Part shown: positions 1 to 57,319 of the stretch, piece after piece | Numbering within the stretch: the stretch's first letter is position 1 | How the letters are laid out: every line of letters begins with the position of its first letter | Origin: Malacoraja senta | Taxonomy: Eukaryota | Assembly (NCBI GenBank): GCA_038087875.1 | Contig: CM075977.1 | Coordinates: 84,816,001 to 84,880,000 of the forward strand | DNA: 64,000 bases | Direction: 5' to 3' | Translations under genes and position numbers: made by a program | The notes under the pieces: model-generated | The model's input: the letters and a program-made list of their open reading frames with translations, nothing else | The model's database searches: none | What the model was told of the DNA's origin: nothing

Positions 1-75
1 GCAAGTGAACGTCTGCCTAACCTGAAAGGATCATCAGGGTCCCAGGACAGAGTCGAGGGAGGAGGTATAGGGACT
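1..75 (-). mobile_element. Penelope-like element fragment (linker/endonuclease region)
   Basis: Reverse strand resembles PYTSSLDSVLG...FQVRQTFTC and is similar to the fragment at 19650-19700. Confidence 0.55.
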
Positions 76-914
76 GTGCCTTTGCTCTAGCTGTGTCACT
101 CTGACTGTTCTCCAACTAGTATCTCAAGAAACCCATTGACGTGGTACTAACCTCCTGCAGATTTCTTGCATTCACACAGGTAAATCTGGCACTATATCTT
201 CACCTGTTGCACCGTGACACAGTTTTAGCAACTTTATTCATCTTAACGGAGAGGAACAGCCCTGTGAAGACTTTATTTATGTTGTTAGGAAGAGACTTCC
301 ACAATTTAAATTTAGTGTGTTTGATGCGATAATAAAATATTCCTAAATTAGAGTAGTATGTGACTTGCTCCCAGTGAAGTGTGCATGCATTCATACATCT
401 GCTACTCTCATCCTTTCTTGTGGTGGAGGTCACGTTTAGGAATTTGTTGGAGTAGACCAGGAGCACAACTGCATTTAGTAAATGGTATGCTATAACCATT
501 GTGTGGGCAATGGTGGAGGGAATGAAGTTTTAAGGTACAGCTGGAGTGCAAAGGAAGGTGGTTGCTTTGATCTGGATAGTGTTGAGGTACTCAAGTGTTT
601 TTGGAGTGGGATTCATCCAAACTTGTGTCGAGCAAACCATCGCACTCTGGACTTGTACTTTGGAAAGACTTCAGGCAGTCAGACACCTACCCTCTGACAT
701 GCCATCCTAGCTATTATTGTACTGACCGAGTATATGAAGGAAGCTGGGAATGTCAAGGATAGCCATCAATACTTATCAATTGATGTCTGTGTGTTACCTA
801 GACGTTCTCACACACAGGCAGAGATGGAGGACTGCAAATGGAATTAAACGTTGTGCAATTAGCAAATATCCCCATTTATGGCCCAGTGATGAGAAGATCC
901 TTGACCTACCAGTC

Positions 915-1315
915 AGCTCTCCTTTCCCCTTCTCTGTCTGCACATCTTCCACCCCTCAGTTTCCCATTTTCCTACCCCCCCCTCCCTCCCTATTCCCTTA
1001 CATCCACTATTCCTCCCTCCGATTCTACATCTTTAGTGCCTCAAACTTCCTTCTCAGATTCCACATCTGCTCCTTTTGATTTCACTTTACTATGTTACTT
1101 TTTGTTACTATCTGCACCTATCTGCCAATAATCCCACCTCACCTGAATCCACCTATCACTTGCTAGTTCTTGTCCCGACCCCTTCCCTTCACTTCTCTCT
1201 ACCAGCTTTCTCGCCTCTATCAGTCTGAAGAAGATTGGTTTCCAGACCAAAACACCACCTGTTTTCCCTCCACAGATGCCGCCTGGCCTGCTGAGTTCCT
1301 CCAGCACTTTGTGGT
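915..1315 (+). mobile_element. Penelope-like element 3' region with degenerate hammerhead motif
   Basis: Pyrimidine-rich tract, then CAGTCTGAAGAAG...AGATGCCGCCTGGCCTGCTGAGTTCCTCCAGCACTTTGTG, shared with other copies in the window. Confidence 0.65.
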
Positions 1316-1734
1316 TTATTCGGTATCACTGGTAAAGATGGTTCGGCCTAGGACACAAGGGACACCACTCTGAGGAAGCCCTGCAGTGTTGTCCAGGGCA
1401 AGGATGAGTAACCTCCAATAATCACCATCATTCTCCTTCAGGCTAGATAAACACCAGTCTTCATTCCATTGCACTCAGGCTACTACTTTAGACTTTGTCA
1501 AAAGTACACTTTGCCCACCTGCAGCACCACAGGAACTATTGACATTACACAAACATTTACTGCATTCTTGGTTCCTGAACCACTGAATAATGCAGATTCA
1601 GCATTTTAGTCGAATTCTACCAGTGTGTCTCTGCTACAAGAAGGCAGACACCATGCAGGACCTTTCAGCCTGAAGGGCCTTGACAGAGGATGAGTCCTTA
1701 TCCACCACTTTCCCCAGGCTCACCAACTGTCGAA

Positions 1735-2028
1735 GCAGTGGCAGGGTGGGTAGAGTTGCTCTCTCACAGGGACCCAGGTCAGATCCTGATCTCAGGTGCT
1801 GCCTGTGTGGAGTTTGCCCATTTGGATTGTGATTGTGTGGGTTTCCACAAGGTGCCTTGGTTTCCTCCCACATCCAGAGGATGTGCGTGTGGCCTCTGTA
1901 AATGGCCCTAGGTGTGCAGCGAGGAGGCAAAAATTGTATGACATGGAATTAGTGTAAACAGATCAATGGTCAGCATGGATTTGGTGGCCGATGGGCTTGT
2001 TTCCATGCTGTATCTTTAAATAAATAAA
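1735..2028 (+). mobile_element. tRNA-derived SINE (V-SINE/HE1-like)
   Basis: tRNA-like head, conserved core GTGGAGTTTG...GGTTTCCTCCCACATCC, tail GTTTCCATGCTGTATCT-TAAA repeats. Confidence 0.7.
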
Positions 2029-2599
2029 CTTTTGATGTTTCAGTCCAGCAGACCAAACCCAGTTCAATCTGGCAGATTTTATGGTTTATTTTAAGTAAAT
2101 AGTTTAAGGGATTTTCATAAAATGGTTGCTGTTAAGAGTTTTGCATTTTTGCCAGAAGCAGTTTTGGATCTCTAGCAGGGCAAAGACAGAAATGCTCAGA
2201 GTGCCACATTTCCGACATGCTTAGAAAACGATAAAAGTACAACAGCTGAAATTTCACAAGTTCAGCCGAAACTCAACTCCAGACTCAGATTCAAGAGATA
2301 GATAGTGGTAACCACATCCTTGGCGACTTCTTGATTTAAAAGGTCTTGTGTGAAGTCAGGAGCAAATCTCATAAAAGTGTTAGCTTGCTGCCGTCAAGGG
2401 GGTGCTAGAATGATGGGAGAGAACGCCACCTACTGCACAAGAGCTGCATGGCTGTACTGTGATGCTGTGCTGCATTGGAGCTTAGGTACTCATGCTGATT
2501 CACTGCAGAAATATTAAGGGTGGTAAGATTACTGGCTGGCATCTATCCATGTTAAGTTTGTATGTCCCATCATGACCCAAGGTTTACTTTAGTGCAACT

Positions 2600-2671
2600 C
2601 AATTAAAAACAAAAAGCAAAATTCAAAGGAATTAAATTTTATTAAACATCGCAATAACAGGATTCTTTATT
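2600..2671 (-). terminator. Putative distal polyadenylation site
   Basis: Minus-strand AATAAA at 2666-2671 and 2638-2643, followed by U/GU-rich TTGAATTTTGCTTTTTGTTTTTAATTG. Another AATAAA lies at 4544-4549. Confidence 0.6.
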
Positions 2672-4715
2672 TACAACAGCATTATTTAACATCAAGTAAG
2701 CAAATGACATCAGCAAAAGCAATATTAGTTAACAACTTGCATAAATGTATTTAATTTCTTTGAATATACCTAAATTGGCATAGAATGCTCACAATAAGGA
2801 TACAAAAATGGATGCCAGAAGAAAAAAAGTTGTTTAGTGTGAACTAAAAAAAAATACATCTCTGAACTTGCAAACACTGTAAGCCTTCTGCCGAAGAACC
2901 TTACTTTACATATTGCTTAGAATTTGCAATCTGCCAATATACACCACTCAGAGACTTGGGGGAGAAAACAAACATTTTACAAATAGTGCCCCACTACTGA
3001 CCACAAAAGGAACAAAGTAACATTGAAAAAAAAAACTAAGCAATAATCATGGGTCCATATTGCAGTAGGCAACCATTATTTCTAATTATCTGACAACAAA
3101 AATTAATAACTGATGACACATCCAAAAATTTTACACAATTCACTATACAAACAATATAATACAACAAACAGCTGCTAGGAATATACAGGACATAAAAACA
3201 TATCTAAGGCATTATGCTAAGTTATAGCATTTGAGGTTCCTGCACTGTACTAAGAAATTGACGGATCTTACAAAACAAAGTCAAGCTCTAAATGAAAAAG
3301 TAGACGGGATTTGCCTATCAAATTGAAAATCCATAGAATTGTTTGTGCAGAGAATTTGTCTGCATCCAGTCAACAATCAACTGTGTAGAAATACTATAAA
3401 ATGATGTTGAACCACACCAACACACCATGGCTTAGCTGTATTTTAAAATCAACTCAGTGAAATCTTTGGATTTTGCAAACGGAGTCGTATCGCCTTGCTT
3501 GTCTGCAATGTACAGCACTACATAGTTCTTAAATGTTAGTTTTGATTCCATACTTTAAGTCTGTTAGAGGGAAAATGTTATGATTGAACACAATGCAATC
3601 AGAGAGATTTTGCTTCCCAATGAAATTAGCTCCCATGATCCTCTTCCCAAGAGAGTAGACCTTTAAGCATTCAAATTTAGAGAAGATATACATTTGGGTT
3701 ACAGTGCACAGAGTTTAAATGATCATGTGAAACAAACCTACCCTACCCTTCAGAGTTCTGTGTTTTAATCTTTTGGCTCTGTAGGCAACTACACAGTGGT
3801 TATTTGCACAATTCCAACAGTAATACACCCAGTCATAAACCATATATTTTAAATTAAAGCAAAGATACAAAATAGGATAAATACAGAAAACTTATTAGAT
3901 TATTACATGATGTTCCCATAGACATAAATGCAAAGGTCTAGGCTCTAAATGCTTGCAAAATTAATTGCCTGCATTTCAGAAAACTTTTCTAATTCACAGC
4001 AGTATTTACATAAAGCTATATACCAAAGCAATCTGAAACACAATGATGTTATCTGAACACACAGAAAGAATACATTTCTTTATCAAATGAACAATCTGCA
4101 GCTGAGATGTGGCAGCTCACCTTTCTAAAAGCAACTGTTGAGGCAAAAACAACTGTTGAGGCAAAAACAGGTCTGCATTCAGTGTCTGTACAGTGATCAA
4201 TATGATCAGTGTGGGTTTTGGGCTTTAAATGACAGCATGCTCCATACAGCCTGACACACAAGCACAGAGGTATCAGGACTCAGAATGTTACAGCTCAAGA
4301 GAGAAGCTATGTAATAAAACACCCACTTCCAACCCATTTAACAAATTTTCCAATGTATTCATAATATTAGACTGAGAGAAGCTATATGGACCAGAGTAGC
4401 AGTTTGTAGTTTTGGCATGATATTTGCATGTTTGAAAATCTAAAAATGGTTGCAAAATATCTATCAGAAAACCAGTTAAGTTACTGGCCTTATAAATGCT
4501 ACTGAAACAGGCTTGTTCACTACCTATCAAGGCATCATGATTCTTTATTTACAAAATAAACCAGAGACACTGCTGCTAAGGTATCTAATGTAATACTGTA
4601 GTACCTCACATTAAATCAGCAGCATAAGAATTTTACTTCATCAAAATTCTACAAGTATGTAAAACATAATGCTCTCAAGTAAGTTATTGCTTGGTTACAT
4701 ACAGGCTCTTATATA

Positions 4716-6328
4716 CAGTGCCCTCCATAATGTTTGGGACAAAGATCCATTATTTATTTATTTGCCTCTGTACTCCACAATTTGAGATTTGTAATAGAAA
4801 TAAAAATGTGGTTAAAGTGCACATTGTCAGATTTTATAAAAGGCCATTTTTATACATTTTGGTTTCAACATGTAGAAATTACAGCTGTGGTTACACATAG
4901 TCTCCCCATTGCAGGGCACCATGTTTGGGACACATGGCTTCACAGGTATTTGTAATTGCTCAGGTGTGTTTAATTGCCTCCTTAATGCAGGTGTACGAGA
5001 GCTCTCAGCACCAAGTCTTTCCATCATCTTCGGAAACTCTTATTGCTGATAATTTACATGAGGTTGTGCCAATGAAAGTCAAAGAAGCCATTATGAGACT
5101 GAGAAACAAGAATAAAACTGTTAGATACATCAGCCAAACCTTAGGCCTACTGAAATCAACTGTTTGGAACATCACTAAGAAGAAAGAGAGCACTGGTGAG
5201 CTTACTAATCGCAAAGGGACTGGCAGGCCAAGGAAGACCTCCACAGCTGATGACAGAAGAATTCTCTCTATAATAAAGAAAAAAAACCAAACACCTGACG
5301 GACAGATCAGAAACTCTTCAGCAGTGGATTTGTCAATGACCACTGTCCGCAGGAGACTTAATGAACAGAAATAGAGGCTACCCTGCAAGATGCAAACCAT
5401 TGGTTAGCTGCAAAAATAGGATGGTCGGGTTACAGTTTGCCAAGAAGTACTTAAGAGAGCAACCACAGTTCTGGAAAAAGGTCTTGTGGACAGATGAGAT
5501 GAAGATTAACTTATATAAGAGTGATGGCAAGTGTAAAGTATGGAGAAGAGAAGGAACTACCCAAGATCCAAAGCATACAACCTCATCTGTGAAACACGGT
5601 GGTGGGGGTGTTATGGCCTGGGCATGTATGGCTGCTGAAGGTACTGGCTCACTTATCTTCATTGCTGATACAACTGCTGATGGTAGTACCATAATGAATT
5701 CTGAACTGTAAAGACACATCCTATCTGCTCAAGTTCAAACAAATGCCTCAAAATTCATTGGCTGGCGGTTCATTCTACAGCAAGACAATGATCCCAAACA
5801 TACTGCTAAATCAACAAAGGAGTTTTGCAAAGCTAAAAAATGGTGAATTCTTGAGTGGCCAAGTCAATCATCTGATCTGAACCCAATTGAGCATGCCTTT
5901 AAATGCAAAAGAGAAAACTGAAGGGGAATAGCTCCCAAAACAAGCATAAGCTAAAGATGGCTGCAATACAGGCCCGGCAGAGCATCAACAGAGAAGACAC
6001 CCAGCTGGTGATGTCCATGAATCGCAGACTTCAAGCAGTCATTGCATGCAAAGGATATGCAACAAAATACTAAACAGGACTACTTTCATTTACATGACAT
6101 TGGTGTGTCCCAAACATTATGGTGCCCTGAAATGGGGGGGACTATGTATAAACACTGCTGTAATTTCTACATGGTGAAACCAAAATGTATAAAAATGGGC
6201 TTTATACAATCTGACAATGTGCACTTTAACCCCATGTGATTTTTTTCTATTACAAATCTCAAATTATGGAGTATAGAGGCAAATAAATAAATGATGGGTC
6301 TTTGTCGCAAACATTATGGAGAGCACTG
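4716..6328 (+). mobile_element. Tc1-family (DD34E, IR/DR type) DNA transposon, copy 1, defective
   Basis: TA|CAGTGCCCTCCATAATGTTTGGGAC...CATTATGGAGAGCACTG|TA; ~220 bp TIRs; transposase fragments with GRPR, WTDE, QQDNDPKH, DLNPIE; frameshifts and stops. Confidence 0.96.
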
Positions 6329-8894
6329 TAGCTAACTGCTTTCCAAAAGTCATTGCATCTTATTTTTTATAAAATACTGTACCATATGAAAATGTTATGG
6401 CTGTTTGTGTTCTCTTATCTGATCCTAGATCTACACAATTTTGCTTTTTGAAACTGCCGCTGACTTTGGGAAATTGTAATGAAGCACTGGGTTTCTGAAG
6501 CTTATAAAACAGTCCGTCCTCTCAGCACAATATAACTGCATTGAACAATTAGTTTAGAATAATAGGCTAGACGAGTCTGTAATACCGTTAAATTTTATGT
6601 CTCACAATGCAAGCATTACTATCCCATGCATAAACTCAACTAAACACACCAGAAGCAAAGTCATGAGTGTAAAGTCATGAATTTAATAGTTATAACAATC
6701 TGGTCTAATATGCATGATAGGATAGCATTGTTGGAACTAAACTGCATTGAATACGTAGCCTCAATGGAACCGCCGACATTGTAGTATTTGGTATATTGTG
6801 TGAGTAAATGTCACAATTATATCTGCTTAATTCTTCAAAGCTAAAAGCTTTTTAATGTCTACATAACAAATGCAGTATGGAAAAGACCCATACTAACCCC
6901 ATGCCCACACATTAAAAGGAAACTCAACAAACTCTTAATAAATTCCAAATCTATTCACAATTGTCACTAGAATGAGTAGCCCAAGATACGTTTGCTCAGA
7001 ATTCTGTATTAAGAGTAAAAACCACATGACTTGATACCAGAAATGCAATAAACCAGGTAATGCAAATATTGGTTCTGCACACAAGATGGGATGCACCATT
7101 TAATGAGTTTCTTGTAAAATGTTGATCAAGTTTTACGTGCGTGACTCGTAATAGAAGCTTCTGCTCTTTGTACAGTTCGGTCCCAAACCAATTGATTGTT
7201 CAGGGACAATTAAAGAGTATAAAAAATATTAGATTAGTAATACTTTGCTAGATTAGAGATGCAACATTAAATGATTATGAATCAGCAGTGAGGCCAGGCA
7301 CAGGATGCCACCTATTTCAGAAATCCAGTAAAAAAAATTCTCCTGAAGATTCTCATTTCCGCATTATGTCTTAGCTGCCTGTATACCTGTGTTTGCTTCT
7401 ATCAATGAAGATGAACAACTTATCTCCTGAAGAACACATTGTACAAAATGGGAAAGCAAGGTACACCAAGAAAAGGAGAGAATACATTTGATCTTTGCTT
7501 TTGTTATTTTGCCATTGCAGAATTTTTTGAAAGAAAAGAAGTGGAGAAATCCTTAGCAAATGCCAGTGATGCTCCTGAACTCCACCCAGCACCCCAGCCT
7601 GTCTGTGGGAGAGTGTGAATCATATTGCTCATCTCTGGTGGACAGAGATAAAGCCAGCAAGGGAGAATGGTCTGCAAGAGGCCAACCTGTCATTTTGGAA
7701 AGGCCAATACTGTTGCCACTACCACTGAAGCACAACCTAAGAGAGGCAAACAGTAAGGCTCAGAAGAAGGGAAGATGGTGAAGGAGAGAAGGAAGCTGGC
7801 CTTCAGTTCCAAGGAGGCCAATTTCATGTAGGGATTTTTGTTGTGAGAATACCAGATGTTGCTAGGAGAATAGTAATGTGGACTGGGTGAACAACATACA
7901 CTTGCAATGAGGATATGACTACAAATTCCTGCCTTTTTTAAAGATGGATTATGCAGCTCGTGATGGGATTGAATTGGGGCTATGGGCTTTCCTGAGACAG
8001 TCCGAATGACTGAGAGAAATCTATTCTGCATTTTGGGCACGGGTATCGACATACGTCTCCATCGCTGGTAGGCCATGGGAACTAGCACGGAGATTTGACC
8101 TGAATGTGAATGAAAGAAAGTAGTAAAAATGAGCCACAGATTTGATAACTTTACTAGATCTGTAACATGGCAAGGATCAAAATGGTCTTATTTACTGCTA
8201 TGCAATCGTTAAGATGATTCGGTAATTTTGTGTTTTCTGTCGACATGCAACAATTACTGTCAGATAAGTTATTCTGGTGTGAGAGGTGGGGCTCTACAGA
8301 GCTGATAACGTTTAATAGGTAGCCTCAGTCTGCAGAGCCAAATGATTATAATATTTAAATGTAATGAAAAACAGTCAAAAATTTCATGCACCCTGGATAT
8401 TGAGCCATGACTGCAGAACACACAGAGCATGAAGAGATAATGCACCAAAACACCTTTGCTAACACACTAACAACCCACCAGGTCTATTCCCCATTTGGTT
8501 TCATGTAAAACATAAAGCAATTTCATATTCCATTTAGATACCTTCCAAACCAAATTCTTTATTCTTACATTATTCAGCTTATTGGTAAGTTTATTTATAT
8601 TCACAGCAGAACCTTTTAAAGAAAGGCTTCATTTCTAAATACTGTTGAAGGGAAACATGGCTGAAAGCCTGCACACTGGATTAAATAGCAGAAAAGTCAG
8701 CAACCACTGAAGATCAAAAAAAAGCGCAAAGAGCTGATCATTCTGCAAAACGACGATAGAAATACATTCATCGGACAAGGTTCAAAGCCGATGTCAATCT
8801 GTTGTGAGGACAGACTTAAGTCACACTTATGGTGAATGCAATTAATGGACAAAGCAACTTCGGTAGGCAAGTACGTTGCTACTAAGGAGCCTGT

Positions 8895-9063
8895 CTCTGT
8901 TAGCAACACTTGTAACAGGAATTTCTCTGAGACTGGCTGAGAGTTCAATTGGCTGCTGCACTTTTCTTGGCTTGATCTGGTGGAGCTTGTTTGTTGGTAT
9001 AATTGTTACCACCTAAATGTTGACCTTGCACTGTACATCAGCAAGCACGTGGACCTTCTGGAC
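8895..9063 (-). pseudogene. Frameshifted SRC-1a-like alternative C-terminal coding segment inside the NCOA2 terminal exon
   Basis: Acceptor ctcctgtcttcaactag|GTC gives VQKVHVLADVQCKVNI*. The -1 frame continues LGGNNYTNKQ...; a second -1 frame gives SQPVSEKFLLQVLLTE. This matches the recalled NCOA1 isoform-a tail VQQVQVFADVQCTVNLVGGDPY...KSLLQQLLTE. Confidence 0.8.
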
Positions 9064-9098
9064 CTAGTTGAAGACAGGAGGAATAGCAATCCAGAGGG

Positions 9099-9110
9099 TC
9101 AGCAATATTT
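9099..9110 (-). CDS. NCOA2: NCOA2 terminal coding exon segment, KYC-stop
   Basis: Acceptor gcttttcaatcttgcag|AAA TAT TGC TGA. KYC* is the C-terminus of vertebrate NCOA2 and NCOA3; the phase matches the exon 21 donor. Confidence 0.93.
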   Translation of the reverse strand, partial: KYC

Positions 9111-10084
9111 CTGCAAGATTGAAAAGCATGAAATACATTTTTAATTAACAGAAATAAGACACAATATACCATTATAAAGAGTAAAAGCAGTGGATTCAGA
9201 ACAGTAAGTGACTTTGGAAAATGAGAAACCAACTATTTTTTCTGGTCTTTATGCTTTTTTTAGACACATTAAAAATAGTTTGCATACCATATAATAAACT
9301 TTCCAATTGCTTGAATTATTATGCTCAAATCATTTTTAAAAAACTCAACGATATTAAAACCATTACAGTGCATTCATTATGTGCAGTATACACTTGATAT
9401 TTTTAGTTTACATTTCTTGCTTCGTGTCCTAGTTAAGGATATGTTCAGGAGCAGTCAAGGAGTTAACAAGCCAGGGCTGGATAAACAATATTACAGTTTA
9501 AATGTTTTAAAATATAACGTTTTAGTCAACTCATCCCTGCTTTAAAAAAAACTATAGACTGAATTGAATGGATTTTTAAAAAACAGGAATGCGTTTTGAC
9601 TTTTTGCTTTTACTATTCACTATTAGTTAGTTAATAAATCTCTGTTTTACTAATGGAACACAATTAATTATTTATTGCAACTTGTTATTGTAGCACTCTT
9701 GCAATAAATCTTTCCTCCTAAAATAACAAAAAGTTTAATTCACATCAGCAGTAACAACCATCATCCAAAAGGCAACCCGTGTGCTAAATATCTAATGTTA
9801 TCTGTTTTAAGATTTGTAATTTGGCAATAAAAGCCGGTAACACAATAATATCCCACCATGCATTGGTGAAGCTTGGCTTCCATTCAACTTAGATAGAGAT
9901 AAAATTACCTCTTTTATTCAAATGCAAATTAACTAGAATTTATTTAAGGAATTAATCCATAGGCCAAATGAGCAATTTCAGATAGACCATTTGGATAAGA
10001 AATGATACAATCCTCACTTTGGAGCTGTGCTGAAAGAGAGTCACTGCAGGTATGATGCTTCTTCCTATTCCTACCATCTATGAG

Positions 10085-10420
10085 GCAGGGTCTCCCAGTT
10101 GCCAAACACTTTAACTCCCCTTCCCATATGACCTTTCTGTCCTGGGCCTCATCCACTGTCAGTGAGGCCAAAGGCAAATTGGAGGAACAGCACCTCATAT
10201 TTTGCTTGAGCAGCTTACAACATAGCAGGATGAGTATTGATTTCTCTAAATTCAAGTAACCCTTGCATTCCCTCTCTCTCGGTCCCTCCCACACCCTAGT
10301 CATCCTACTAGTTTCACTGCTGTCCTGCTGAATTTCACCTTTTCACTTTCTAGTTTTACTAATTATAACCTTCTTCACAGCAACAGTGGACCATTGTGGG
10401 CTCCACCTTTCCTTGATCAT
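10085..10420 (+). mobile_element. Penelope-like element, GIY-YIG endonuclease C-terminal fragment
   Basis: Degenerate LPVAKHFNSPSH..DLSVLGLIHC..EAKGKLEEQHLIFCL...GMSIDFSKFK*, typical of the PLE ORF end. Confidence 0.75.
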
Positions 10421-10842
10421 TTTCATACAAAAGCACGTAGAGAATACAAATAACTCTGAACTTTATGAACCATATGTGCAGGTGACAATATATAAGAAAT
10501 AACTAAGGAAGTGACCAGAAACAAAACCTATGTATAGGATTTTTCTAGGAGCAATTATTTAAAGAGCATTAAGATTTAAATTCTTAAGATTATACATAAT
10601 ATGTACTACAAATCTATGCTGATATAGTCAAGGATTTTACAGGGCTATAAACTGGGCATTAGATGATGTACATTAGGTCCAAGAATTAATTGTGCAGTTG
10701 TAAAACTAATTACTTTGTGATTCAGCCCCGTCCCTTAACTGAATATCCACTTAAATAATTTATCTACTTCATAATAAACTCAAAGTACGCTTATTGCGAC
10801 TTTAATTGCATTTGGGTAGTCATGGTACTTAATGTGAAGATA

Positions 10843-12478
10843 CAGTGCCCTCCATAATGTTTGGGGCAAAGACCCATCATTTATTTATTTGCCTCTGTAC
10901 TCCACAGTTTGAGATTTGTAATAGAAAAAATCACATGTGGTTAAAGTGCACATTGTCAGATTTTATTAAAGGGTATTTTTATACATTTTGGTTTCACCAT
11001 GTAGAAATTACAGCTGTGTTTATACATGGTCCCCCCCATTTCAGGGCACCATCATGTTTGGGACACATGGCTTCACAGATATTTGTAATTGCTCAGGTGT
11101 GTTTAATTGCTTCCTCAATGCAGGTATAAGATAACTCTCAGCACCTGGTCTTTCCTCCAGTCTTTCCATCACCTTTGGAAACTTTTATTGCTGTTTATCA
11201 ACATGAGGACCAAAGTTGAGCCAATGAAAGTCAAAGAAGCCATTATGAGACTTAGATACAAGATTAAACTATTAGAGACATCAGCCAAACATTAGGCTTA
11301 CCAAAATCAACTGTTTCGAACATCATTAAAAAGAAAGAGAGCACTGGTGAGCTTACTTATTGCAAAGGGACTGGCAAGCCAAGGAAGACCTCCATAGCTG
11401 ATGACAGAAGAATTCTCTCTATAATAAAGAAAAATCCCCAAACACCTGTCCGACAGATCAGAAACACTCTTCAGGAGTCAGATGTGGATTTGTCTATGAC
11501 CACTGTCCGCAGAAGCCTTCATGAACAGAAATACAGAGGCTACACTGCAAGACACAAACTACTGGTTGCCAAGAAGTACTTAAGAGAGCAACCACAGTTC
11601 TGGAAAAAGGTCTTGTGGCCAGATGAGACGAAGATTAACTTATATCAGAGTGATGGCAAGAGCAAAGTATGGAGGAGAGAAGGAACTGCCCAAGATCCAA
11701 AGCATACCACCTCATCTGTGAAACACGGTGGTGGGGGTGTTATGGCCTGGGCATGTATGGTTGCTGAAGGTACTGGCTCACTTATCTTCATGAATGATAC
11801 AACTGCTGATGGTAGTAGTATAATGAATTCTGAAGTGTATAGACACATCCTATCCCCTCAAGTTCAAACAAATGCCTCAAAACTCATTGACCGGCGATTC
11901 ATTCTACAGCAAGACAATGATCCCAAACATACTGCTAAAGCAACAAAGGAGTTTTCCAAAGCTAAAAAATTGTCAATTCTTGAGTGGCCAAGTCAATCAC
12001 CTGATCTGAACCCAATTAAGCATGCCTCTTATATGCTGAAGAGAAAACTGAACTGGGACTAGCCCCCAAATCAAGCATAAGCTAAAGATGGCTGCAATAC
12101 AGGCCTGGCAGAGCATCACCAGAGAAGACACCCAGCAACTGGTGATGTCCATGAATCGCAGACTTCAAGCAGTCATTGCATACAAAGGATATGCAACAAA
12201 ATACTAAACATGACATTGCTGTGTCCCAAACATTATGGTGCCCTGAAATGGGTGGGGGGGGGGGGGGGGGGGGGAGGGGGGTGTCGGGACTATGTATAAA
12301 CACTGCTGTAATTTCTACATGGTGAAACCAAAATGTATAAAAATGGCCTTTATTACAATCTGACAACGTGCACTTTAACCACATGTGATTTTTTTTCTAT
12401 TACAAATCTCGAATTGTGGAGTACAGAGGCAAATAAATAAATGATGTGTCTTTGTCCCAAACATTATGGAGGGCACTG
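10843..12478 (+). mobile_element. Tc1-family transposon, copy 2, defective
   Basis: Same TIRs with TA TSD. ORF 11484-12062 has WPDE, QQDNDPKH and SPDLNPIK (catalytic E to K); frameshifted N-terminus. Confidence 0.96.
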
Positions 12479-13509
12479 TATATTAAGAGCTAAAAGCCAA
12501 TCAGAATGCTCAGTGAAAGTGTACTACTTATATGATGCTCATGTGTCTACAAACTCTGTGAAAACATTTAGCAAAACAGAACATCCATGACAGACAATAG
12601 TTGCTTATACTGTAAAATCTGAGTGTGATTAAGTTTACAGGTTCCCCCACTATCCCTGAAAAATTGAACATAAATAGCATTTTGAGGCTTAACTGCATTT
12701 GCACATTTTGCTTGGTAGTTAATCAAATATAGCCCAAAAGGGCCAACATTTTGCTGGGGGCTCTTTCAGATAAACAGGTAACTGTTTTTCACAAACTGTA
12801 CTAATTTTGTCAATATTCTTTGACTGCTGGAAATCTTACTGGCCTGAAAACCGCAGGTCAGATCCTGAAATTCACCTATTTACCCTACCAACTGTGCCAA
12901 GTACATATTTTGAACTTCCAAATCTGCTTCATGCATATACAATAGGTTATTTTTATAATTGGGTCTTTGTTATGTTAGTATGGACAAAGTAAAAAATAAA
13001 CTGCCAATGTTATTAAACCATTAGCTCATTTAACGTTTAAATGATCAAGGACAGATTCAATGTCATCCATCAAAGTAATGCTTACTAAAAGCAAGTTTAC
13101 AAATGTTCCCTGTGAATAGTCTCTCTCATTGTGTCAGGTTATGTGGTTTGCCACAATAATAATGATAGCAATTAACTATTACATTAGAACAATCCAGGTA
13201 ATAAGTGAGGTTTGACAGCGTTTTTCAAAGTCCATCCACAAACAATGTACAGTAGATCTTTGATAACTCTGCACATTCAGGATTTCGATTGGGCTGGACT
13301 GACTTATGGTCTAGATTACTAGATGTTATTCTTATTAATATGCCAACACACTTTAAACTAGTTTTCTTTTTAAATGTTACACAGTATTACAATAAATTAA
13401 ACAGTTAAACTGATAGGTTTAAAGAGTGTGCAGAAAACATGTGATGATAAAGATTTATTAGAGTTGTGCTGCAATTAACAAATTAAAAAGAGGTTAAATG
13501 AAACAAGGT

Positions 13510-13800
13510 TTGTTTCCACCCATCACTTACCAGCTTCTGTCACAAAACTTCTCCTCACCCCTCCACAACCTGGTTCCATCACCTTATAATAGCTCCCTAT
13601 CTGGTTCTACCTACCACCTACCGCTCTCCACACCCCCCCCCCCCTTTCCCATCTGCATACTGGGCATCTTCCCTGTGCACATTCAGTCCTCATTCAGGGA
13701 CTCGAAATGACGACAATCTCTCTCCCTCCGCAGATGATGCCTGACCCGCTGTTCCCCAAGCAATTTGATTTTTGCCCCAGGTTACAGCATCCACAGGCTC
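13510..13800 (+). mobile_element. Penelope-like 3' fragment, degenerate
   Basis: C/T-rich tract, then CAGTCCT...GAAATGACGAC...CAGATGATGCCTGACCCGCTG. Confidence 0.55.
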
Positions 13801-14689
13801 CACTTTGCTTTAAATAGTTGAGTTCCCATTTAACTGCATCTTCAGATTTCATAGTATTCATATATATATTTTTACACTAAAACCTGAAAACTACAGATAT
13901 TAATGTGGTATCTGTAAGAATATATATTTTTAAAAAACCAAGAATGGTTTTGTTTACTGGCACAAGCATCCTTGAATGTCAAATCCATCAAGCTAGATGC
14001 ACTCACCCCTACACATCAGGAAGGGCAAGGGAAACAAGATTTCTTTAATGAGTATCCAGGTATTGAAATACACTGCACTGTTAAAAGTAAATGGGCAAAC
14101 ATTAGTGCAGTGACTAATCAGTCTGCAGTCAATTGCTCTGAAGAAAACTTTCATTAATAAGCAGCAGAGAGAGCTGATGGGACAGGCAAGTTTGATTTCT
14201 TCATATCTGTTCAGTGTAATGGTTTTGCATTAACACTGGGCACTTCACATTCTATTAAAAGAGATATTAGCCATTTGAAAAGGATCTTTGATACTCAGAA
14301 AAAGGCAGCTTGGAAAACATGGCAAAAGTAAGTTTTTTTTTGGTGCTGCAGGTGTTATTTAAAACCACCATGCATGTAACTCATCCAATAAACATTTTTT
14401 TGGTCTCCCGAGCCTGTCGAGGAGAGTGGGATGGAAATTGTGCAAGTCTATGGCGATTTATGTTGGCAACAGAGTATCGATTCCATTAATGTTTGAGAAG
14501 GTTATCTCAAAGACCTTATTCTCAAGTGATACTGGGCTTGTGCTAGGTGTCTTTTTATGCTGACTAACTTGGAAAAAAGTACAAAAACGGATTCCTTTGG
14601 TTGAAAATCCTTCAGCCAAGAAAGACAATAGTTTAACCATATTCTGTTCAACCACCTCAGCTGCTGGCACAAACTGAATAAGGAGATAT

Positions 14690-14757
14690 GTCACCCATTC
14701 CTTCTCTCCAGAGATGCTGCCTGTCCCGCTGAGTTACTCTAGCATTTTGTGTCTATC
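14690..14757 (+). mobile_element. Short Penelope-derived repeat with TSD
   Basis: GTCACCCATTCCTTCTCTCCAGAGATGCTGCC... flanked by the 11-bp direct repeat TAAGGAGATAT (14679-14689, 14758-14768). Confidence 0.8.
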
Positions 14758-15409
14758 TAAGGAGATATATAGGGTTTGGGGCACAGCTCAGCTCCGCGTT
14801 CAGACTTTCCACCTCATCCAGTTACCGAACAACACAGTTCTGCGACCGTCGCAATACAAATTCAATAAAAAGATAGCTGCAGAATAAAATTGAGAATGTG
14901 GCAGATAACACAAATACTGGGTCCTCAGGATGAACACAGAACAGTTCAGGGACAGACCCTTCGGCACACAATATCATGCCAAACATTATGCCAGGTTAAA
15001 CTAATTTCCTCTGCCAGTGATCCATATTTCTCCATTCACTGCATATCGCTGTGGTTGGACACTAATCTAGAGTAGGAATGTGAAATGTGAAATGCTTGTG
15101 CAGATTGCTTCAATTCTTGAGGCCAACACCGAGAACCCATCGCAGGCAAGTCTTTAGTAAAATGGTTTCCCATTACTTAAGTTTTCCCCTCAGCACTTCC
15201 CCCCCATACCTGCACCATTCCCTATCCCACACAGGACAAATTATCACCTACCACAATCTTCTATCTTGACCCTCCTCTGTCACTAATCTCCGACTTATCC
15301 CATCCCCAATAAACTTCCTGCCTGATCCAACCTCTCCCATCCACCACCACCAATTTCTTGCCCCATCCCCATCCCCATCTCCTCCCTTGCCACACTTCAG
15401 TCCAATACT

Positions 15410-15662
15410 TAGTCCTACACATTAGGGGCAATTGTAAATTGTCCATGTTAGTCAGCATAACAAGCCCAGTATCACTTGAGAATAAGATCTTTGAGATAAC
15501 CTTCTTGAACATTAACCTACAAATCCACATGTCTGTGGGATGTGGGAAGAAACCAGAACACCTGGAGGAAACCCACGCAGTCACGGGAGAATGTCCAAAC
15601 TCCACAGAGATAGCACCTACCATCAGGATCTAATCTGGGTGCTGAGACACATTAGCTCCACC
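15410..15662 (-). mobile_element. tRNA-derived SINE with an internal foreign segment
   Basis: Same family core on the reverse strand. Confidence 0.65.
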
Positions 15663-16180
15663 TGTGTTCATTAACACAATATTAATTTTAATATTTGAGA
15701 TTTTAAAACAAAATTCACTATGACCTTGCATTATGTCTACTGCAGACCTCCCACTCTCTCCAGTGGGACTGCTTATACTTCATTTCCTCTACACTGTCAC
15801 CAACGTTACTCAAGCAACATTGGAGATGGGGACATTATTTTTTTCCCATTGCCAGTCTTAATATAAATAGTGTTTTCAAGCGGTAATTTTTTTTCTCTTG
15901 CTAATTGTCACTTTACTTTTGAATAAGCGAAGCTCTGTTCTTTAAGTAGTTATTTACTCTGTGAGAGGCATCACACTGAAGAACACACTTATCAATTTGG
16001 AGAGTGGGTGGGGAAAGGAGTGAGAAACAGTTTGGTTTTCATCTGCACATGTTCAGCAGAGTCAGTATTAAATACTGATTATACATGCTTGAGTTGACCT
16101 TCTCCGCCCTATGCTCGGAACTGAGACTGATGATTGGATTTGGCCAGTTTGAACCAGAGATCAAAGCAAAGACCATCCAT

Positions 16181-16275
16181 AGGTACACACAAAAAGCTGG
16201 AGTAACTCAGCGGGTCAGGCAGCATCTCTGGAGAAAAGGAAAATGTGACGTTTTGGGTCAAGACCCTTCCGCAGT
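16181..16275 (-). mobile_element. Short Penelope-derived repeat (mutated hammerhead core)
   Basis: Reverse complement of the family at 36980 and 39327. Confidence 0.75.
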
Positions 16276-16559
16276 CCCTTCTTACACAAAGACCATCCAG
16301 AACAGTTAAACACTAGATAAATTCATTGAGCCACCAGTTGAAATGCAATAGACTAATAATGCCTCTGATTATAAAAAAAAGATGGAAGAAACCTGTCCCC
16401 ACCTCAGGTTCTTTGCACTCGTCACAGAAAATCTTCAAAGCCTGGTCCTAACTATACATTACATAGAATTTTACAAAGAAAATTAAAATTCTGTGTGATT
16501 CATTGTAACTGCTTAAGGCAGTAATATAAGAAAAACTTTGCCTGATACATCTGATTGTA

Positions 16560-18098
16560 CAGTGCCCCCTATAATGTTTGGGACAAAGACCCATCATTTA
16601 TTTAATTTGCCTCGGTACTCCACAATTTCAGATTGTTATAGAAAAAAAATCACATGTGATTAAAGTGCACATTGTCAGATTTTATTAAAGGCCATTTTTA
16701 TACATTTTGGTTTCAACATGTGGAAACTACAGCTGTGTTTATACATAGTTCCCCATTTCTGGGCACCATAATGTTTGGGACACATGGCTTCACAGACGAT
16801 TGTAATTGCTCAGGTGTGTTTAATTGCCTCCTCAATGCAGGTATAAGAGTGCTCTCAGCACCTAATCTTTCCTCCAGTCTTTCCATCACCTTTGGAAACT
16901 TATATTGCCGTTTATCAACATGAGGACCAAAGTTGTGCCAAGGAAAGTCAAAGAAGCCATTATGAGACTCAGAAACATAAATACAACTGTTAGAGACATC
17001 AGCCAAACCTTAGGCTTACCAAAATCAACTGTTTGGAACTTCATTAAGAAGAAAGAGAGCACTGGTGAGCTTACTAATAGCAAAGGGACTGACAGGCCAA
17101 GGAAGACCTCCGACCTCCACAGCTGATGACAGAAGAATTCTCTCGATAATAAAGAAAAAAAACCAAACACCTGACGGACAGATCAGAAACACTCTTCAGG
17201 AGTGGATTTTTTAAAGACCACTGTCCGCAGAGGACTTCATGAACAGAAATAGAGGCTACACTGCAAGATGCAAACCACTGGTTAGCTGCAAAATAGGATG
17301 GCCAGGTTACAGTTTGCCAAGAAGTATTTAAAAGAACAACCACTGTTCTGGAAAAAGGTCTTGTGGACAGATGAGACAAAGATTAACTTATATCAGAGTG
17401 ATGGCAAGAACAAGTATGGAGGAGAGAAGGAACTGCCTAAGATCCTAAGCATACCACCTCATCTGTGAAACACGGTGGTGGGGGTGTTATGGCCTGGGCA
17501 TGTATGGCTGCTGAAGGTACTGGCTCACTTATCTTCATTGCTGATACAACTGCTGATGGTAGTAGCATAATGAATTCTGTGGAGTGTAGACACATCATAT
17601 CTGCTCAAGTTCACACAAATGCCTCAAAACTCATTGGCCGGCGGTTCATTCTACAGCAAGACAATGATCCCAAACACAAAGGAGTTTTTCAAAGTTAAAA
17701 AATGGTAAATTCTTGAGTGGCCAAGTCAATCACCTCATCTGAACCTAATTGAGCATGCCTCTTATATGCTGAAGAGAAAACTGAAGGGGATTAGCCCCCA
17801 AAACAAGCATAAGCTAAAGATGGCTGCAATACAGGCCTGGCAGAGCATCACCAGAGAAGACACCCAGCAACTGGTGATGTCCCAAACATTATGGTGCCCT
17901 AAAATGGGGGACTATGTACAAACACTGCTGTATTTTCTACATGGTGAAACCAAAATGTATAAAAATAGCCTTTATTAAAATCTGACAATGTGCACTTTAA
18001 CCACATGTGATTTTTTCTATTACAAATCTCAAATTGTGGAGTACAAAGGCAAATAAATAAATGATGGGTCTTTGTCCCAAACATTATGGAGGATACTG
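16560..18098 (+). mobile_element. Tc1-family transposon, copy 3, defective
   Basis: TA|CAGTGCCCCCTATAATG...CATTATGGAGGATACTG|CA; fragmented transposase; internal deletion near 17880. Confidence 0.95.
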
Positions 18099-18338
18099 CA
18101 ATTTAAAGTTACTGGCTACTATACAGCAGTTGAAATGAAAAGCATTGCCTGCCTTCCGTGGTAGTAGTTCCACCTTGCTCATAGGCAGTCAAAGCCCTTT
18201 GAACACCCAAGTTAAAAGATTACAAAAAATAAAATAAATGAAAGGTACAATGAAACACTACCACGTTTAACTAAAACCATTACAATATGGTAAAATAATC
18301 CAAACATTTACTGATAGCTTATCCACATGATCCATAAC

Positions 18339-18828
18339 TAGGGTTTGCCAACTGTCCCGTATTAGCCGGGACATCCTGTATTTTGGGCTAAATTGGTTTG
18401 TCTCCGTACGGGACCGGCCTTTTCCCGTATTTGACTGTTACTACTCGGGTCGAGGGGACTGTAGGGTCGGAGCGCCGCGTCCGGCCTGCCTCACCCGTGC
18501 CGATATAGTGCAGCAGCAGCGTCTCGCCCGTGGCCCCATCGGTTGGCAGCCTTCGGACCTTCGCTTACCGCCGACACCCCCCACCCCTCCTTCTCATGGC
18601 CGATGATCATCGGTTCATGTGTTGGATGGGGTTCCGGACTTTGCGCGCGACGTCGCGCGGACCAAAACTCCTCAGCTGGCCCTCAAGCTGGGCTTTGTGT
18701 GCATCAGCACCCGGGTGAACTTATCATTCACCCAGCCAGAGCCGTGTCAGTCAACGAATTGCTGTCAGGAATTTGTCCCGTATTTTGACCGTTTGTCCCT
18801 ATTTGGGAGTGAGAAGTTGGCAACCCTA
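18339..18828. mobile_element. Non-autonomous hAT-type DNA transposon (MITE)
   Basis: TIRs TAGGG(T)TTGCCAACT / AGTTGGCAACCCTA; perfect 8-bp TSD TCCATAAC (18331-18338, 18829-18836); subterminal TGTCCCGTATT repeats; CpG-rich. Confidence 0.9.
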
Positions 18829-19215
18829 TCCATAACATTACTCAAATTAACTGGACCATTTATTGCATCCCTGCCCCTCTAGTTCTAAGCACAAATCTGG
18901 ACACAAATATTCATGCCTTTGTCGTACATGCTGCTGTTGCTTGGTTAATGTTTGAGTCTTCCTGCAAAGGCTGATTGCAACTGTTTGCACTCCACATTTA
19001 ATACTATTACTCACTTGCATATTTGAAATGTTTTCCAATGCAAAGTATTTTGCAGATAAGTCCTTTCATGACATTAAAATGCCATGTCTCTCTCTAGCCT
19101 TTGGTAAGACGCATTTGTTGAGGTCTCAGCGACTTGGCTGCTGTTCCAAAATTGAGCTGCTAATGCACCAGTATTGATTTTCACTGATATTGGGAAAACA
19201 TTGTCCATTTCTTAC

Positions 19216-19405
19216 CTGTTCAGCACCCATAGAGGACAATCCTGATGTTGGCATAGAGGTCATGCTAATCTGGCCTGACATCTGATTCATGTTGTTCATA
19301 CCAGCAGCATTGGTTGCCATAGAAACACTGATATTCATGTTGTTGCTGTACATGCTGGTGTTTGCCTGTTGTCCAAACTGTGGTGGGGACGGCTGTGAAA
19401 ACATG
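19216..19405 (-). CDS. NCOA2: NCOA2 exon 21 equivalent
   Basis: Acceptor ctcttctaatatag|C, donor CAG|gtaaga. [33 protein letters not shown]...GLSSMGAEQ; 190 nt, ends phase 0. Confidence 0.96.
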
Positions 19406-52120: not shown

Positions 52121-52123
52121 CTT

Positions 52124-57119: not shown

Positions 57120-57319
57120 NNNNNNNNNNNNNNNNNNNNNNNNNNNNNNNNNNNNNNNNNNNNNNNNNNNNNNNNNNNNNNNNNNNNNNNNNNNNNNNNN
57201 NNNNNNNNNNNNNNNNNNNNNNNNNNNNNNNNNNNNNNNNNNNNNNNNNNNNNNNNNNNNNNNNNNNNNNNNNNNNNNNNNNNNNNNNNNNNNNNNNNNN
57301 NNNNNNNNNNNNNNNNNNN
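57120..57319. other. Assembly gap (200 N)
   Basis: Run of exactly 200 N. Confidence 0.99.

What the first reader, a model, noticed from the sequence alone, without database searches (positions are those of the whole stretch)
8895..9063. Hidden SRC-1a-type C-terminal tail with an extra LxxLL box in the NCOA2 terminal exon
Seen: 47 nt past the KYC acceptor lies a second strong acceptor (ctcctgtcttcaactag|G, 9063), in phase 0 like the exon 21 donor. It reads VQKVHVLADVQCKVNI* (TAG at 9013-9015). One base back the frame reads LGGNNYTNKQAPPDQAKK, and one more base back KCSSQLNSQPVSEKFLLQVLLTE (LLQVLLTE 8895-8918), staying open to 8697. Known: NCOA1 isoform SRC-1a ends in VQQVQVFADVQCTVNLVGGDPYLNQ...KSLLQQLLTE, with a C-terminal NR box usually regarded as NCOA1-specific; canonical NCOA2 ends in KYC. 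Order, spacing and length match (~57 vs ~55 aa). Inference: the alternatively spliced C-terminal NR box predates the split of the p160 paralogues. Here it survives either as a decaying relic, as a truncated 16-aa isoform, or intact if both 1-nt deletions are errors; both can be placed in short homopolymers (ATTT, AAAA).
Basis: partly seen in the sequence, partly recalled or inferred. Interest (0 to 1): 0.9.

Follow-up and report, generated by a model that had tools for sequence, protein, structure and literature searches.

The report
SRC-1a-type tail fossil in skate NCOA2
The last exon of a skate NCOA2 gene holds a leftover copy of the alternative SRC-1a-type protein tail known from its sister gene NCOA1: only the first 16 codons can still be translated (rays splice to them), while the receptor-binding LxxLL box survives as untranslated sequence in a very conserved 3'UTR.

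Summary

The window is NCOA2 of a skate close to Amblyraja radiata. RNA-derived contigs of related species join exon 21 (end 19216) either to 9110 (…GAEQ-KYC*) or to 9063 (…GAEQ-VQKVHVLADVQCKVNI*). The 16-aa isoform is therefore real. RefSeq already predicts it in Amblyraja, Pristis and Mobula.

Homology to the NCOA1a tail is solid:
- A profile of 30 NCOA1a tails hits piece 1 at E=1e-4.
- It hits the Callorhinchus NCOA2 counterpart of pieces 2+3 at E=3e-7. That counterpart is one open frame ending …LLQELLTE plus a stop.
- The acceptor sits at the same nucleotide as in bird NCOA1.

The LxxLL part is not coding:
- Three other species show the same frameshifts, so these are not assembly errors.
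- One species carries a further 2-nt deletion.
- The skate also has an in-frame TGA and has lost the terminal stop.
- Skate–chimaera differences are spread evenly over codon positions (6/5/7).

The fossil persists because it lies in a ~630-nt 3'UTR block that is about 80% identical (70-94% per 50 columns) across ~400 My. The second frameshift is at 8922-8924, not 8960-8968.

Verdict: a real evolutionary relic plus a truncated isoform. Moderately interesting.

The parts
19216..19405 (-). NCOA2 exon 21 (…[63 protein letters not shown]), phase-0 donor CAG|gtaag at 19216
   Evidence: About 80% identical to NCOA2 fragments. One residue different from Amblyraja radiata NCOA2.
9099..9113 (-). Canonical terminal-exon acceptor (cag, 9113-9111) and the coding part AAA TAT TGC TGA = KYC*
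   Evidence: RNA contigs X15 and X20 join the exon-21 end to 9110.
9064..9081 (-). Alternative 3' splice site: pyrimidine tract ctcctgtcttcaac plus tag (AG at 9065-9064)
   Evidence: RNA contig X31 (depth 51) reads …GGTGCTGAACAG|GTCCAGAAG, the 19216->9063 junction. In the nucleotide alignment it sits at the same position as the a-type acceptor of bird NCOA1.
9013..9063 (-). Translated remnant of the a-type tail: VQKVHVLADVQCKVNI plus TAG (9015-9013)
   Evidence: HMM of NCOA1a tails: E=1.1e-4, model positions 1-16, 11/16 identical to VQQVQVFADVQCTVNL. Identical to the C-terminus of A. radiata isoforms X2/X4. The only change seen in relatives is synonymous (9049).
8924..9016 (-). Untranslated fossil, middle part, in the frame of LGGNNYTNKQAPPDQAKKSAAAN*TLSQSQR. 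It is 1 nt out of frame with the 16-aa tail and has an internal TGA at 8947-8945.
   Evidence: HMM E=0.15, model positions 12-38. Orthologous to the open Callorhinchus frame LGGNGYANQQAPHQAKKRAVANRTLRPSQR.
8922..8924 (-). Second frameshift site: an A-run that is one A shorter than in Callorhinchus (CAGAG-AAAT versus CAGAGAAAAT)
8895..8921 (-). Untranslated fossil of NR box 4: FLLQVLLTE (LxxLL core LLQVLL). The stop that follows it in NCOA1 and in Callorhinchus NCOA2 was lost by a 2-nt deletion just downstream (about 8894).
   Evidence: 8/10 identical to KSLLQQLLTE. Aligns to Callorhinchus KCLLQELLTE plus TGA. Relative X20 has a further 2-nt deletion upstream at 8939.
8481..9113 (-). Deeply conserved block at the start of the terminal exon / 3'UTR, which contains the fossil. 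The core TGCATTCACCATAAGTGTGACTTAAGTCT is at 8840-8812.
   Evidence: Skate versus Callorhinchus: 35-47 identical per 50 columns in all but one bin (22/50, 8626-8577) down to 8481, then background. The core is also present in sterlet (78% over 91 nt) and in a zebrafish-type transcript. No Rfam family and no excess folding.

Best explanation
The window carries the 3' half of NCOA2 (minus strand) of a skate close to Amblyraja radiata.

Its terminal exon has two acceptors 47 nt apart, both used after exon 21:
- The upstream one (9110) gives the canonical end …GAEQ-KYC*.
- The downstream one (9063) is the paralogous counterpart of the acceptor that makes SRC-1a in NCOA1. It gives …GAEQ-VQKVHVLADVQCKVNI*.

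The sequence after that TAG is the remainder of an ancestral a-type tail (LVGG.PY.NQ … K.LLQ.LLTE*). It is no longer translated. It is cut off by the stop, by two frameshifts (about 9016 and 8922-8924) and by an internal TGA, and it has lost its own stop.

It is still recognisable because the first ~630 nt of the terminal exon are under strong non-coding (3'UTR) constraint in cartilaginous fishes.

Shown: the sequence, both splice junctions in relatives, homology to NCOA1a, the frameshifts being real, the non-coding pattern of change, and the conserved UTR block.

Inferred:
- The a-type alternative terminus, with a fourth NR box, existed in the p160 gene before NCOA1 and NCOA2 separated.
- The long reading frame was most likely lost before elasmobranchs and chimaeras split.
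- The 16-aa isoform lacks any extra NR box. At most it changes the extreme C-terminus next to AD2. A role like the AD2-damping effect reported for the SRC-1a terminus is possible but untested.
For: Gene identity: NR boxes KLLQLL, ILHRLL and LLRYLL in the 54507-55790 exon, and NCOA2 hits.

Junctions: X15 and X20 (two species) join exon 21 to 9110. X31 (a third species) joins exon 21 to 9063 and then runs 8514-9065 with 5 substitutions and no gap.

Annotation: A. radiata X2/X4, Pristis pectinata X2/X5/X6 and Mobula hypostoma X1/X2 all end in the 16-aa tail (…CKVNI, …CRVNI, …CKANI).

Homology:
- NCOA1a-tail HMM: window piece 1 E=1.1e-4; Callorhinchus 40-codon frame E=2.9e-7, covering model positions 16-55 and ending …LLQELLTE plus TGA.
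- 0 of 1000 shuffles approach the summed score.
- blastn of the skate block against bird NCOA1: 79% over 48 nt across the acceptor, E=2.6e-6 (alignment).

Not coding:
- No indels at the frameshift sites in three other species, and an extra 2-nt deletion at 8939 in X20.
- Skate-chimaera differences fall 6/5/7 on codon positions 1/2/3.
- The fossil region is no better conserved (about 78%) than the pure UTR after it (about 86%).
Against: - The RNA runs are from related species, not from the window's own organism. They are assembler contigs, so isoform proportions are unknown.
- No shark or other batoid DNA could be fetched because the gene ranges exceed 100 kb. The frameshifts therefore cannot be placed on a tree.
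- The skate state (-1) and the chimaera state (+1 relative to an intact 21-nt stretch) could be independent events, which would mean a later loss.
- The relic in sterlet is only suggestive (CAG TGC ACT GTC AGT ATT TAA, in the right frame offset). It is not significant by HMM.
- No relic was seen after KYC in one NCOA3 locus, in a zebrafish-type NCOA2 transcript, or in the 10 kb downstream of a divergent, unidentified p160 gene (L006).
- The function of the 16-aa tail is untested. Its few changes between lineages are amino-acid changing.
Confidence: 0.8

Rival explanations
1. The tail is intact and encodes a full SRC-1a-like terminus of about 55 aa with a fourth LxxLL box. On this view the two frameshifts are homopolymer errors of the assembly.
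For: Both shifts lie in short runs (ATTT near 9016, AAA at 8922-8924).
Against: - Contigs of three other species have no indel at these places.
- Independent assemblies of three batoid genera give models that stop after the same 16 residues.
- Restoring the two shifts would still leave TGA at 8947-8945 and no stop after LLTE.
- X20 carries a further 2-nt deletion.
Confidence: 0.01
2. The resemblance to SRC-1a is chance in an AT-rich UTR.
For: Piece 3 alone is not significant (E=12) and piece 2 is borderline (E=0.15).
Against: - The pieces are collinear.
- The summed score is 44.6 bits, against at most 10.8 in 1000 shuffles.
- The chimaera orthologue scores E=2.9e-7 and has its stop at the same place.
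- There is a nucleotide-level match to bird NCOA1 across the acceptor.
Confidence: 0.01
3. The relic did not descend from the pre-duplication gene. Instead it was copied from NCOA1 into the NCOA2 terminal exon by ectopic gene conversion in stem cartilaginous fishes.
For: A clear relic was found only in chondrichthyans. It was not found in zebrafish-type NCOA2, one NCOA3 locus or locus L006.
Against: - The acceptor sits in the same phase and directly after the KYC stop, which is expected for alternative acceptors of one ancestral exon.
- Sterlet keeps a suggestive QCTVSI* and TTGTTACAA at the corresponding offsets.
- Conversion between unlinked paralogues over about 170 nt is rare.
Confidence: 0.05
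4. Timing rival: early cartilaginous fishes still made a full a-type NCOA2 tail with NR box 4. The frame was then broken independently and later in elasmobranchs (-1 nt) and in chimaeras (+1 nt).
For: - Relative to an intact 21-nt stretch K-V-x-x-L-G-G, the skate has 20 nt and Callorhinchus 22 nt.
- Callorhinchus keeps 40 codons open, with LLQELLTE and the stop.
Against: - Differences between the two lineages show no third-position excess (6/5/7).
- The fossil is no better conserved than the neighbouring UTR.
- Skate and sterlet share the stop right after V-N/S-I (suggestive only).
Confidence: 0.25
5. The 16-aa isoform is splicing noise. The old acceptor is kept only because the whole block is conserved as UTR, and the tail has no function of its own.
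For: - The isoform differs from the canonical one only by 16 versus 3 terminal residues.
- Changes between lineages are non-synonymous: K>R in Pristis, V>A in Mobula, L>F, C>Y and N>S versus chimaera.
- None of the shark models that were listed ends in the 16-aa tail; up to 15 members per cluster were shown.
Against: - The junction dominates the assembled contig in one RNA run (depth 51).
- The junction is modelled in three batoid orders.
- Piece 1 is the best conserved part of the relic (about 92% versus chimaera).
- The one difference among close relatives is synonymous.
Confidence: 0.35

Closest known systems
SRC-1a (NCOA1 isoform with the 55-56-aa a-type C-terminus, VQQVQVFADVQCTVNLVGGDPYLNQ…QQKSLLQQLLTE)
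   Same: - The acceptor is at the same position and in the same phase.
- The first 16 residues are 11/16 identical.
- The order is the same: GG-x-x-Y-x-N-Q segment, then K-x-LLQ-x-LLTE.
- In Callorhinchus the length (40 codons) and the stop position are also the same.
- NR box 4 of NCOA1 is a genuine receptor-binding motif: peptide AQQKSLLQQLLTE is bound to the GR ligand-binding domain in PDB 3BQD, as tabulated in PMC10297449.
   Different: - The gene is NCOA2, not NCOA1.
- The reading frame ends after 16 codons.
- The LxxLL box is out of frame and untranslated. The skate copy has an internal TGA and has lost its terminal stop.
SRC-1e / canonical NCOA2 and NCOA3 C-termini (…DKKTEEFFSVVTTD in NCOA1e; …KYC in NCOA2 and NCOA3)
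   Same: An upstream alternative acceptor or exon brings in an early stop and so excludes the a-type tail. In skate NCOA2 the KYC acceptor plays this role 47 nt upstream. In bird NCOA1 the e-type exon lies about 195 nt upstream. PMC13199265 describes the a/e pair.
   Different: KYC and the e-type peptide are not similar to each other. In NCOA2 the two ends share one exon, with no intron between them.
RefSeq (Gnomon) models of batoid NCOA2 ending in the 16-aa tail: XP_032875228.1 and XP_032875230.1 (Amblyraja radiata), XP_051878804.1 (Pristis pectinata), XP_062920847.1 (Mobula hypostoma)
   Same: The C-terminus is identical (Amblyraja) or differs by one residue from the one predicted from the window.
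   Different: These are automatic predictions. They carry no statement about the SRC-1a relationship or about the untranslated LxxLL fossil downstream.

Membership tests
p160 coactivator NCOA2 (SRC-2/TIF2/GRIP1) | Central exon with three NR boxes (…KLLQLL…, …ILHRLL…, …LLRYLL…) and an NCOA2-type C-terminal region ending in KYC | tested here: met
   The ORF at 54507-55790 has [23 protein letters not shown] and [13 protein letters not shown]. The best database relatives are NCOA2. Exon 21 differs by one residue from A. radiata NCOA2. KYC* is at 9110-9099.
SRC-1a-type (a-type) alternative C-terminus | Alternative phase-0 acceptor in the terminal exon that is actually used in mRNA | tested here: met
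   RNA contig X31 joins the exon-21 end to 9063. This is the same nucleotide position as the NCOA1 a-type acceptor.
SRC-1a-type (a-type) alternative C-terminus | N-terminal segment VQQVQVFADVQCTVNL | tested here: met
   VQKVHVLADVQCKVNI, 11/16 identical, HMM E=1.1e-4.
SRC-1a-type (a-type) alternative C-terminus | One continuous reading frame of about 55 codons | tested here: not met
   TAG after codon 16, two frameshifts and an internal TGA. The same state is seen in three related species and in three annotated batoid genera.
SRC-1a-type (a-type) alternative C-terminus | In-frame C-terminal LxxLL (NR box 4) followed directly by the stop | tested here: not met
   LLQVLLTE (8918-8895) is out of frame and its stop is lost. 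In Callorhinchus the box and stop are kept, but they are 1 nt out of frame with the acceptor-proximal part.
SRC-1a-type (a-type) alternative C-terminus | Binding of the terminal box to ligand-bound nuclear-receptor LBDs | not testable with these tools
   This needs a peptide-binding assay. It is moot for the skate, because the box is not translated.

The most novel reading that the evidence does not exclude
Two linked ideas. First, the 16-residue module VQxVxV[FL]ADVQCxVN[IL] may be a functional unit of its own, for example the part of the SRC-1a terminus that damps AD2. It would then have been kept as an expressed NCOA2 isoform in rays and skates for more than 200 My. Second, the rest of the former coding exon may have been taken over as a regulatory 3'UTR element, which is why an LxxLL box is still legible about 400 My after it stopped being translated. 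A bolder variant is that some living shark or chimaera still translates the full four-box NCOA2.
Probability: 0.25. Interest if true: 0.6.

Novelty: new variant of a known kind. Interest (0 to 1): 0.45.

Why it matters
The fourth, C-terminal NR box is usually treated as a peculiarity of the SRC-1a isoform of NCOA1. A legible copy in the NCOA2 terminal exon of skates and chimaera sits behind the same acceptor. This shows that the a-type alternative terminus was already present in the p160 gene before the vertebrate paralogues separated, and that NCOA2 later lost it.

It also gives a natural truncation series for asking which part of the SRC-1a terminus does what:
- the full tail in NCOA1a;
- 16 residues without the box in batoid NCOA2;
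- none in the KYC forms.

Finally, it is a clean example of former coding sequence preserved as a strongly constrained 3'UTR block. It does not change the current picture of how p160 coactivators work.

Tried and rejected
1. Penultimate NCOA2 exon ([30 protein letters not shown]). I searched the skate intron 9111-19215 by motif, tblastn and blastn with the Callorhinchus exon. Nothing real turned up; the only hit, 'DGDGAR', is a GGGGAT repeat.

2. Sterlet model ending RCAQVNV*. It looked like the relic, but it is a separate exon 1.9 kb downstream of the KYC exon.

3. PDB search with piece 3: no hit.

4. Shark and other ray loci (Heptranchias, Mobula) and Polypterus: no DNA was returned because the gene ranges exceed 100 kb. 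One bird NCOA1 protein and one divergent p160 protein were not on record.

5. Other loci. One NCOA3 locus (L003), a zebrafish-type NCOA2 transcript (L005) and locus L006, which encodes a divergent p160 protein of unidentified organism, show no a-type relic after their stop. For L006, 10 kb downstream was checked.

6. A KYC relic upstream of the a-type acceptor in bird NCOA1: none, only a CT microsatellite.

7. The conserved UTR block as a structured RNA: no Rfam match, folding z=+0.29.

8. The long open frame 9005-8700 as a coding region: all 6 skate-chimaera differences that I counted by eye in that frame on the alignment change the amino acid. Sterlet has indels there.

9. Literature. I found no paper describing an a-type tail or its relic in NCOA2. 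The 2026 comparative paper on SRC-1/2/3 (PMC13468300) does not mention isoforms. Kalkhoven et al. 1998 (PMC1170374) is not held, so its statements on SRC-1a and AD2 are cited from memory only.

Full report
**Observation.** On the minus strand, exon 21 of a p160 coactivator gene ends …GGTGCTGAACAG|gtaag at 19216, in phase 0. The canonical terminal exon begins at 9110 behind cag and reads AAA TAT TGC TGA (KYC*). Forty-seven nucleotides further on lies ctcctgtcttcaactag|G, with the exon starting at 9063. From there the frame reads VQKVHVLADVQCKVNI and stops at TAG 9015-9013. The frame from 9061 reads LGGNNYTNKQAPPDQAKK. The frame from 9062 reads KCSSQLNSQPVSEKFLLQVLLTE, with LLQVLLTE at 8918-8895.

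**Gene and organism.** The 54507-55790 exon carries the three NR boxes in their NCOA2 form ([36 protein letters not shown]). Database relatives are NCOA2 throughout. Exon 21 differs by one residue from Amblyraja radiata NCOA2. The window is therefore from a skate close to that species.

I found no counterpart of the penultimate exon of bony vertebrates and chimaera (VNDPALRGG…) in the 10-kb intron. All listed shark and ray models also lack it.

- Contigs X15 and X20 align from 8500 to 9113 and then continue into the reverse complement of the end of exon 21. That gives …GAEQ|KYC*.
- Contig X31 (depth 51) aligns from 8514 to 9065 and then continues into the same exon-21 sequence.
- X31 covers the whole tail region with five substitutions and no gap. 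X15 has none of the hypothetical missing bases either. X20 carries an additional 2-nt deletion at 8939.
- The only substitution inside the 16 codons is synonymous (9049, CAC>CAT).

The frameshifts are therefore real in this lineage, and the downstream part tolerates further frame-breaking changes.

**Public annotation.** Cluster members of the batoid NCOA2 proteins show that the 16-aa end is already predicted by RefSeq:
- Amblyraja radiata X2/X4: …GAEQVQKVHVLADVQCKVNI, identical to the window.
- Pristis pectinata X2/X5/X6: …CRVNI.
- Mobula hypostoma X1/X2: …CKANI.

The stop after codon 16 is thus shared by three batoid orders. From general knowledge, these separated some 200 My or more ago. 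The shark models listed end only in KYC. Callorhinchus models end in KFC, with or without the penultimate exon.

**Homology to SRC-1a.** A search seeded with a bird NCOA1 returned many NCOA1 proteins. Their a-type ends read (Q)VQQVQVFADVQCTVNLVGGDPYLNQPGP…QAQQKSLLQQLLTE. Their e-type ends read DKKTEEFFSVVTTD.

I built an HMM from the 30 distinct a-type tails and ran it against all stop-to-stop peptides of the window and three fetched loci (21,492 peptides). The results:

| Rank | Hit | E-value | Model positions |
|---|---|---|---|
| 1 | Callorhinchus NCOA2 frame just after KFC* | 2.9e-7 | 16-55 |
| 2 | Window piece 1 | 1.1e-4 | 1-16 |
| 3 | Window piece 2 | 0.15 | 12-38 |
| 8 | Window piece 3 | 12 | 33-55 |

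The three window hits are collinear within 170 nt and sum to 44.6 bits. The best of 1000 shuffles reached 10.8 bits. At the nucleotide level, the skate block matches the bird NCOA1 terminal exon across the acceptor (79% of 48 nt, E=2.6e-6). In the alignment the two acceptors coincide: ag|GTCCAGAAGGTCCACGTG versus ag|GTCCAACAGGTCCAGGTC.

**The chimaera copy and the anatomy of the fossil.** The Callorhinchus NCOA2 locus (L001) aligns to the skate terminal exon at 89% identity over 500 nt. After KFC* it has ccag|GTCCACGTGTTTGCTGATGTACAGTACAAGGTCAGC (VHVFADVQYKVS…). In another frame it has one uninterrupted stretch, LGGNGYANQQAPHQAKKRAVANRTLRPSQRKCLLQELLTE, followed directly by TGA. That is 40 codons, the same number as from L-V-G-G to T-E in NCOA1a, with the stop in the same place.

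Compared with this copy, the skate differs as follows:
- It has 2 nt fewer at AACA--TTTAGG, which creates the TAG.
- It has a 3-nt in-frame difference.
- It has TGA where the chimaera has CGA (8947-8945).
- It has one A fewer at 8924-8922. This is the true second frameshift.
- It has 2 nt fewer just after LLT(E), which removes the stop.

**Coding or not.** Across the 40 chimaera codons, the 18 skate-chimaera substitutions fall 6/5/7 on codon positions 1/2/3. There is no third-position excess.

The fossil region is about 78% identical between the two species. The purely untranslated 200 nt after it are about 86% identical. Conservation continues to 8481 and then drops to background.

The core of the block (TGCATTCACCATAAGTGTGACTTA.GTCT, 8840-8812) is also found at the corresponding distance after KYC in sterlet and in a zebrafish-type transcript. 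It matches no Rfam family and folds no better than shuffles.

The LxxLL box is thus preserved because it lies in a strongly constrained 3'UTR block, not because it is translated.

**Other lineages.** Sterlet NCOA2 keeps a suggestive CAG TGC ACT GTC AGT ATT TAA (QCTVSI*) in the right frame offset relative to KYC, and TTGTTACAA where the LLQ of the box would be. Neither is significant by HMM. I saw nothing comparable after KYC in an NCOA3 locus, in the zebrafish-type transcript, or in the 10 kb downstream of the gene at locus L006, which encodes a divergent p160 protein of unidentified organism. In bird NCOA1 the e-type exon lies about 195 nt upstream of the a-type acceptor, with no KYC relic between them.

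**Interpretation.** The ancestral p160 terminal exon carried an a-type coding end with a C-terminal NR box. It also had an upstream alternative that brings in an early stop.
- NCOA1 kept both.
- NCOA2 kept the acceptor and the first 16 codons, which are still spliced to in skates and rays. It lost the rest of the frame.
- The remnant was frozen inside a conserved UTR.

Three observations make an early loss more likely than late, independent losses: the even codon-position spectrum, the stop shared by three batoid orders, and the possible shared stop in sterlet. The 20-nt versus 22-nt states of skate and chimaera keep the second option open, at about 0.25.

The skate isoform has no extra NR box. 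Whether its 16 residues do anything is untested. One possibility is that they resemble the part of the SRC-1a terminus reported to lower AD2 activity (Kalkhoven et al. 1998, cited from memory; the a/e difference is summarised in PMC13199265).

**Comparison with what is known.** NR box 4 of NCOA1 is a genuine receptor-binding motif: peptide AQQKSLLQQLLTE is bound to the GR ligand-binding domain in PDB 3BQD, as tabulated in PMC10297449. Full-text searches found no description of an a-type tail or its relic in NCOA2. A 2026 comparative paper on SRC-1/2/3 does not treat isoforms. The 16-aa isoform exists only as automatic RefSeq predictions.

I file the feature as a truncated, largely fossilised variant of a known kind. 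It fails two defining features of a functional a-type terminus: a continuous frame and an in-frame terminal box.

**Limits.**
- The RNA evidence comes from related species and from contigs, so isoform shares are unknown.
- No shark DNA could be obtained.
- Chondrichthyan NCOA1a tails were not retrieved, so gene conversion is made unlikely by position and phase but is not formally excluded.
- Divergence times are from general knowledge.

Noticed in passing
window 47137-53817 and 57320-64000 (N gap 57120-57319): The two stretches are 100% identical at an offset of 10183, and the second copy starts immediately after the 200-N gap. This looks like a false assembly duplication inside an NCOA2 intron. 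It contains a reverse-transcriptase ORF.
   Followed up: partly
window 9111-19215: The penultimate NCOA2 coding exon of bony vertebrates and chimaera ([30 protein letters not shown]; Callorhinchus copy at L001:80236) has no detectable counterpart. RNA contigs join exon 21 straight to the terminal exon, and the listed shark and ray models lack it too. It appears to have been lost in elasmobranchs.
   Followed up: partly
window 8481-9113 (core 8812-8840); L001:84047-84680; L002:52109-52198; L005:4881-4908: This is a deeply conserved NCOA2 3'UTR block, about 80% identical (70-94% per 50 columns) between skate and chimaera. A roughly 30-nt core is also kept in sturgeon and in a zebrafish-type transcript. 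No Rfam family and no special folding. Its function is unknown; a protein- or miRNA-binding site is the obvious guess.
   Followed up: partly
L004:27329-27700 (Bucco capensis NCOA1): The SRC-1e exon (DKKTEEFFSGVAPD*) lies only about 195 nt upstream of the a-type acceptor, with a long CT microsatellite between them. Two adjacent a-type acceptors (…AQ|VQQV… and …AQ|QVQQV…) are seen in many NCOA1 models.
   Followed up: no
window 4925-5711, 11484-12062, 16905-17978, 52533-53711: Tc1/mariner-type transposase fragments and a LINE reverse-transcriptase ORF lie downstream of and within NCOA2 introns.
   Followed up: no
L002:53719-53743 (sterlet): Gene model RXM36587.1 skips the KYC exon and ends in a small exon 1.9 kb downstream that reads RCAQVNV*. 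Its resemblance to QC.VN. is accidental.
   Followed up: yes
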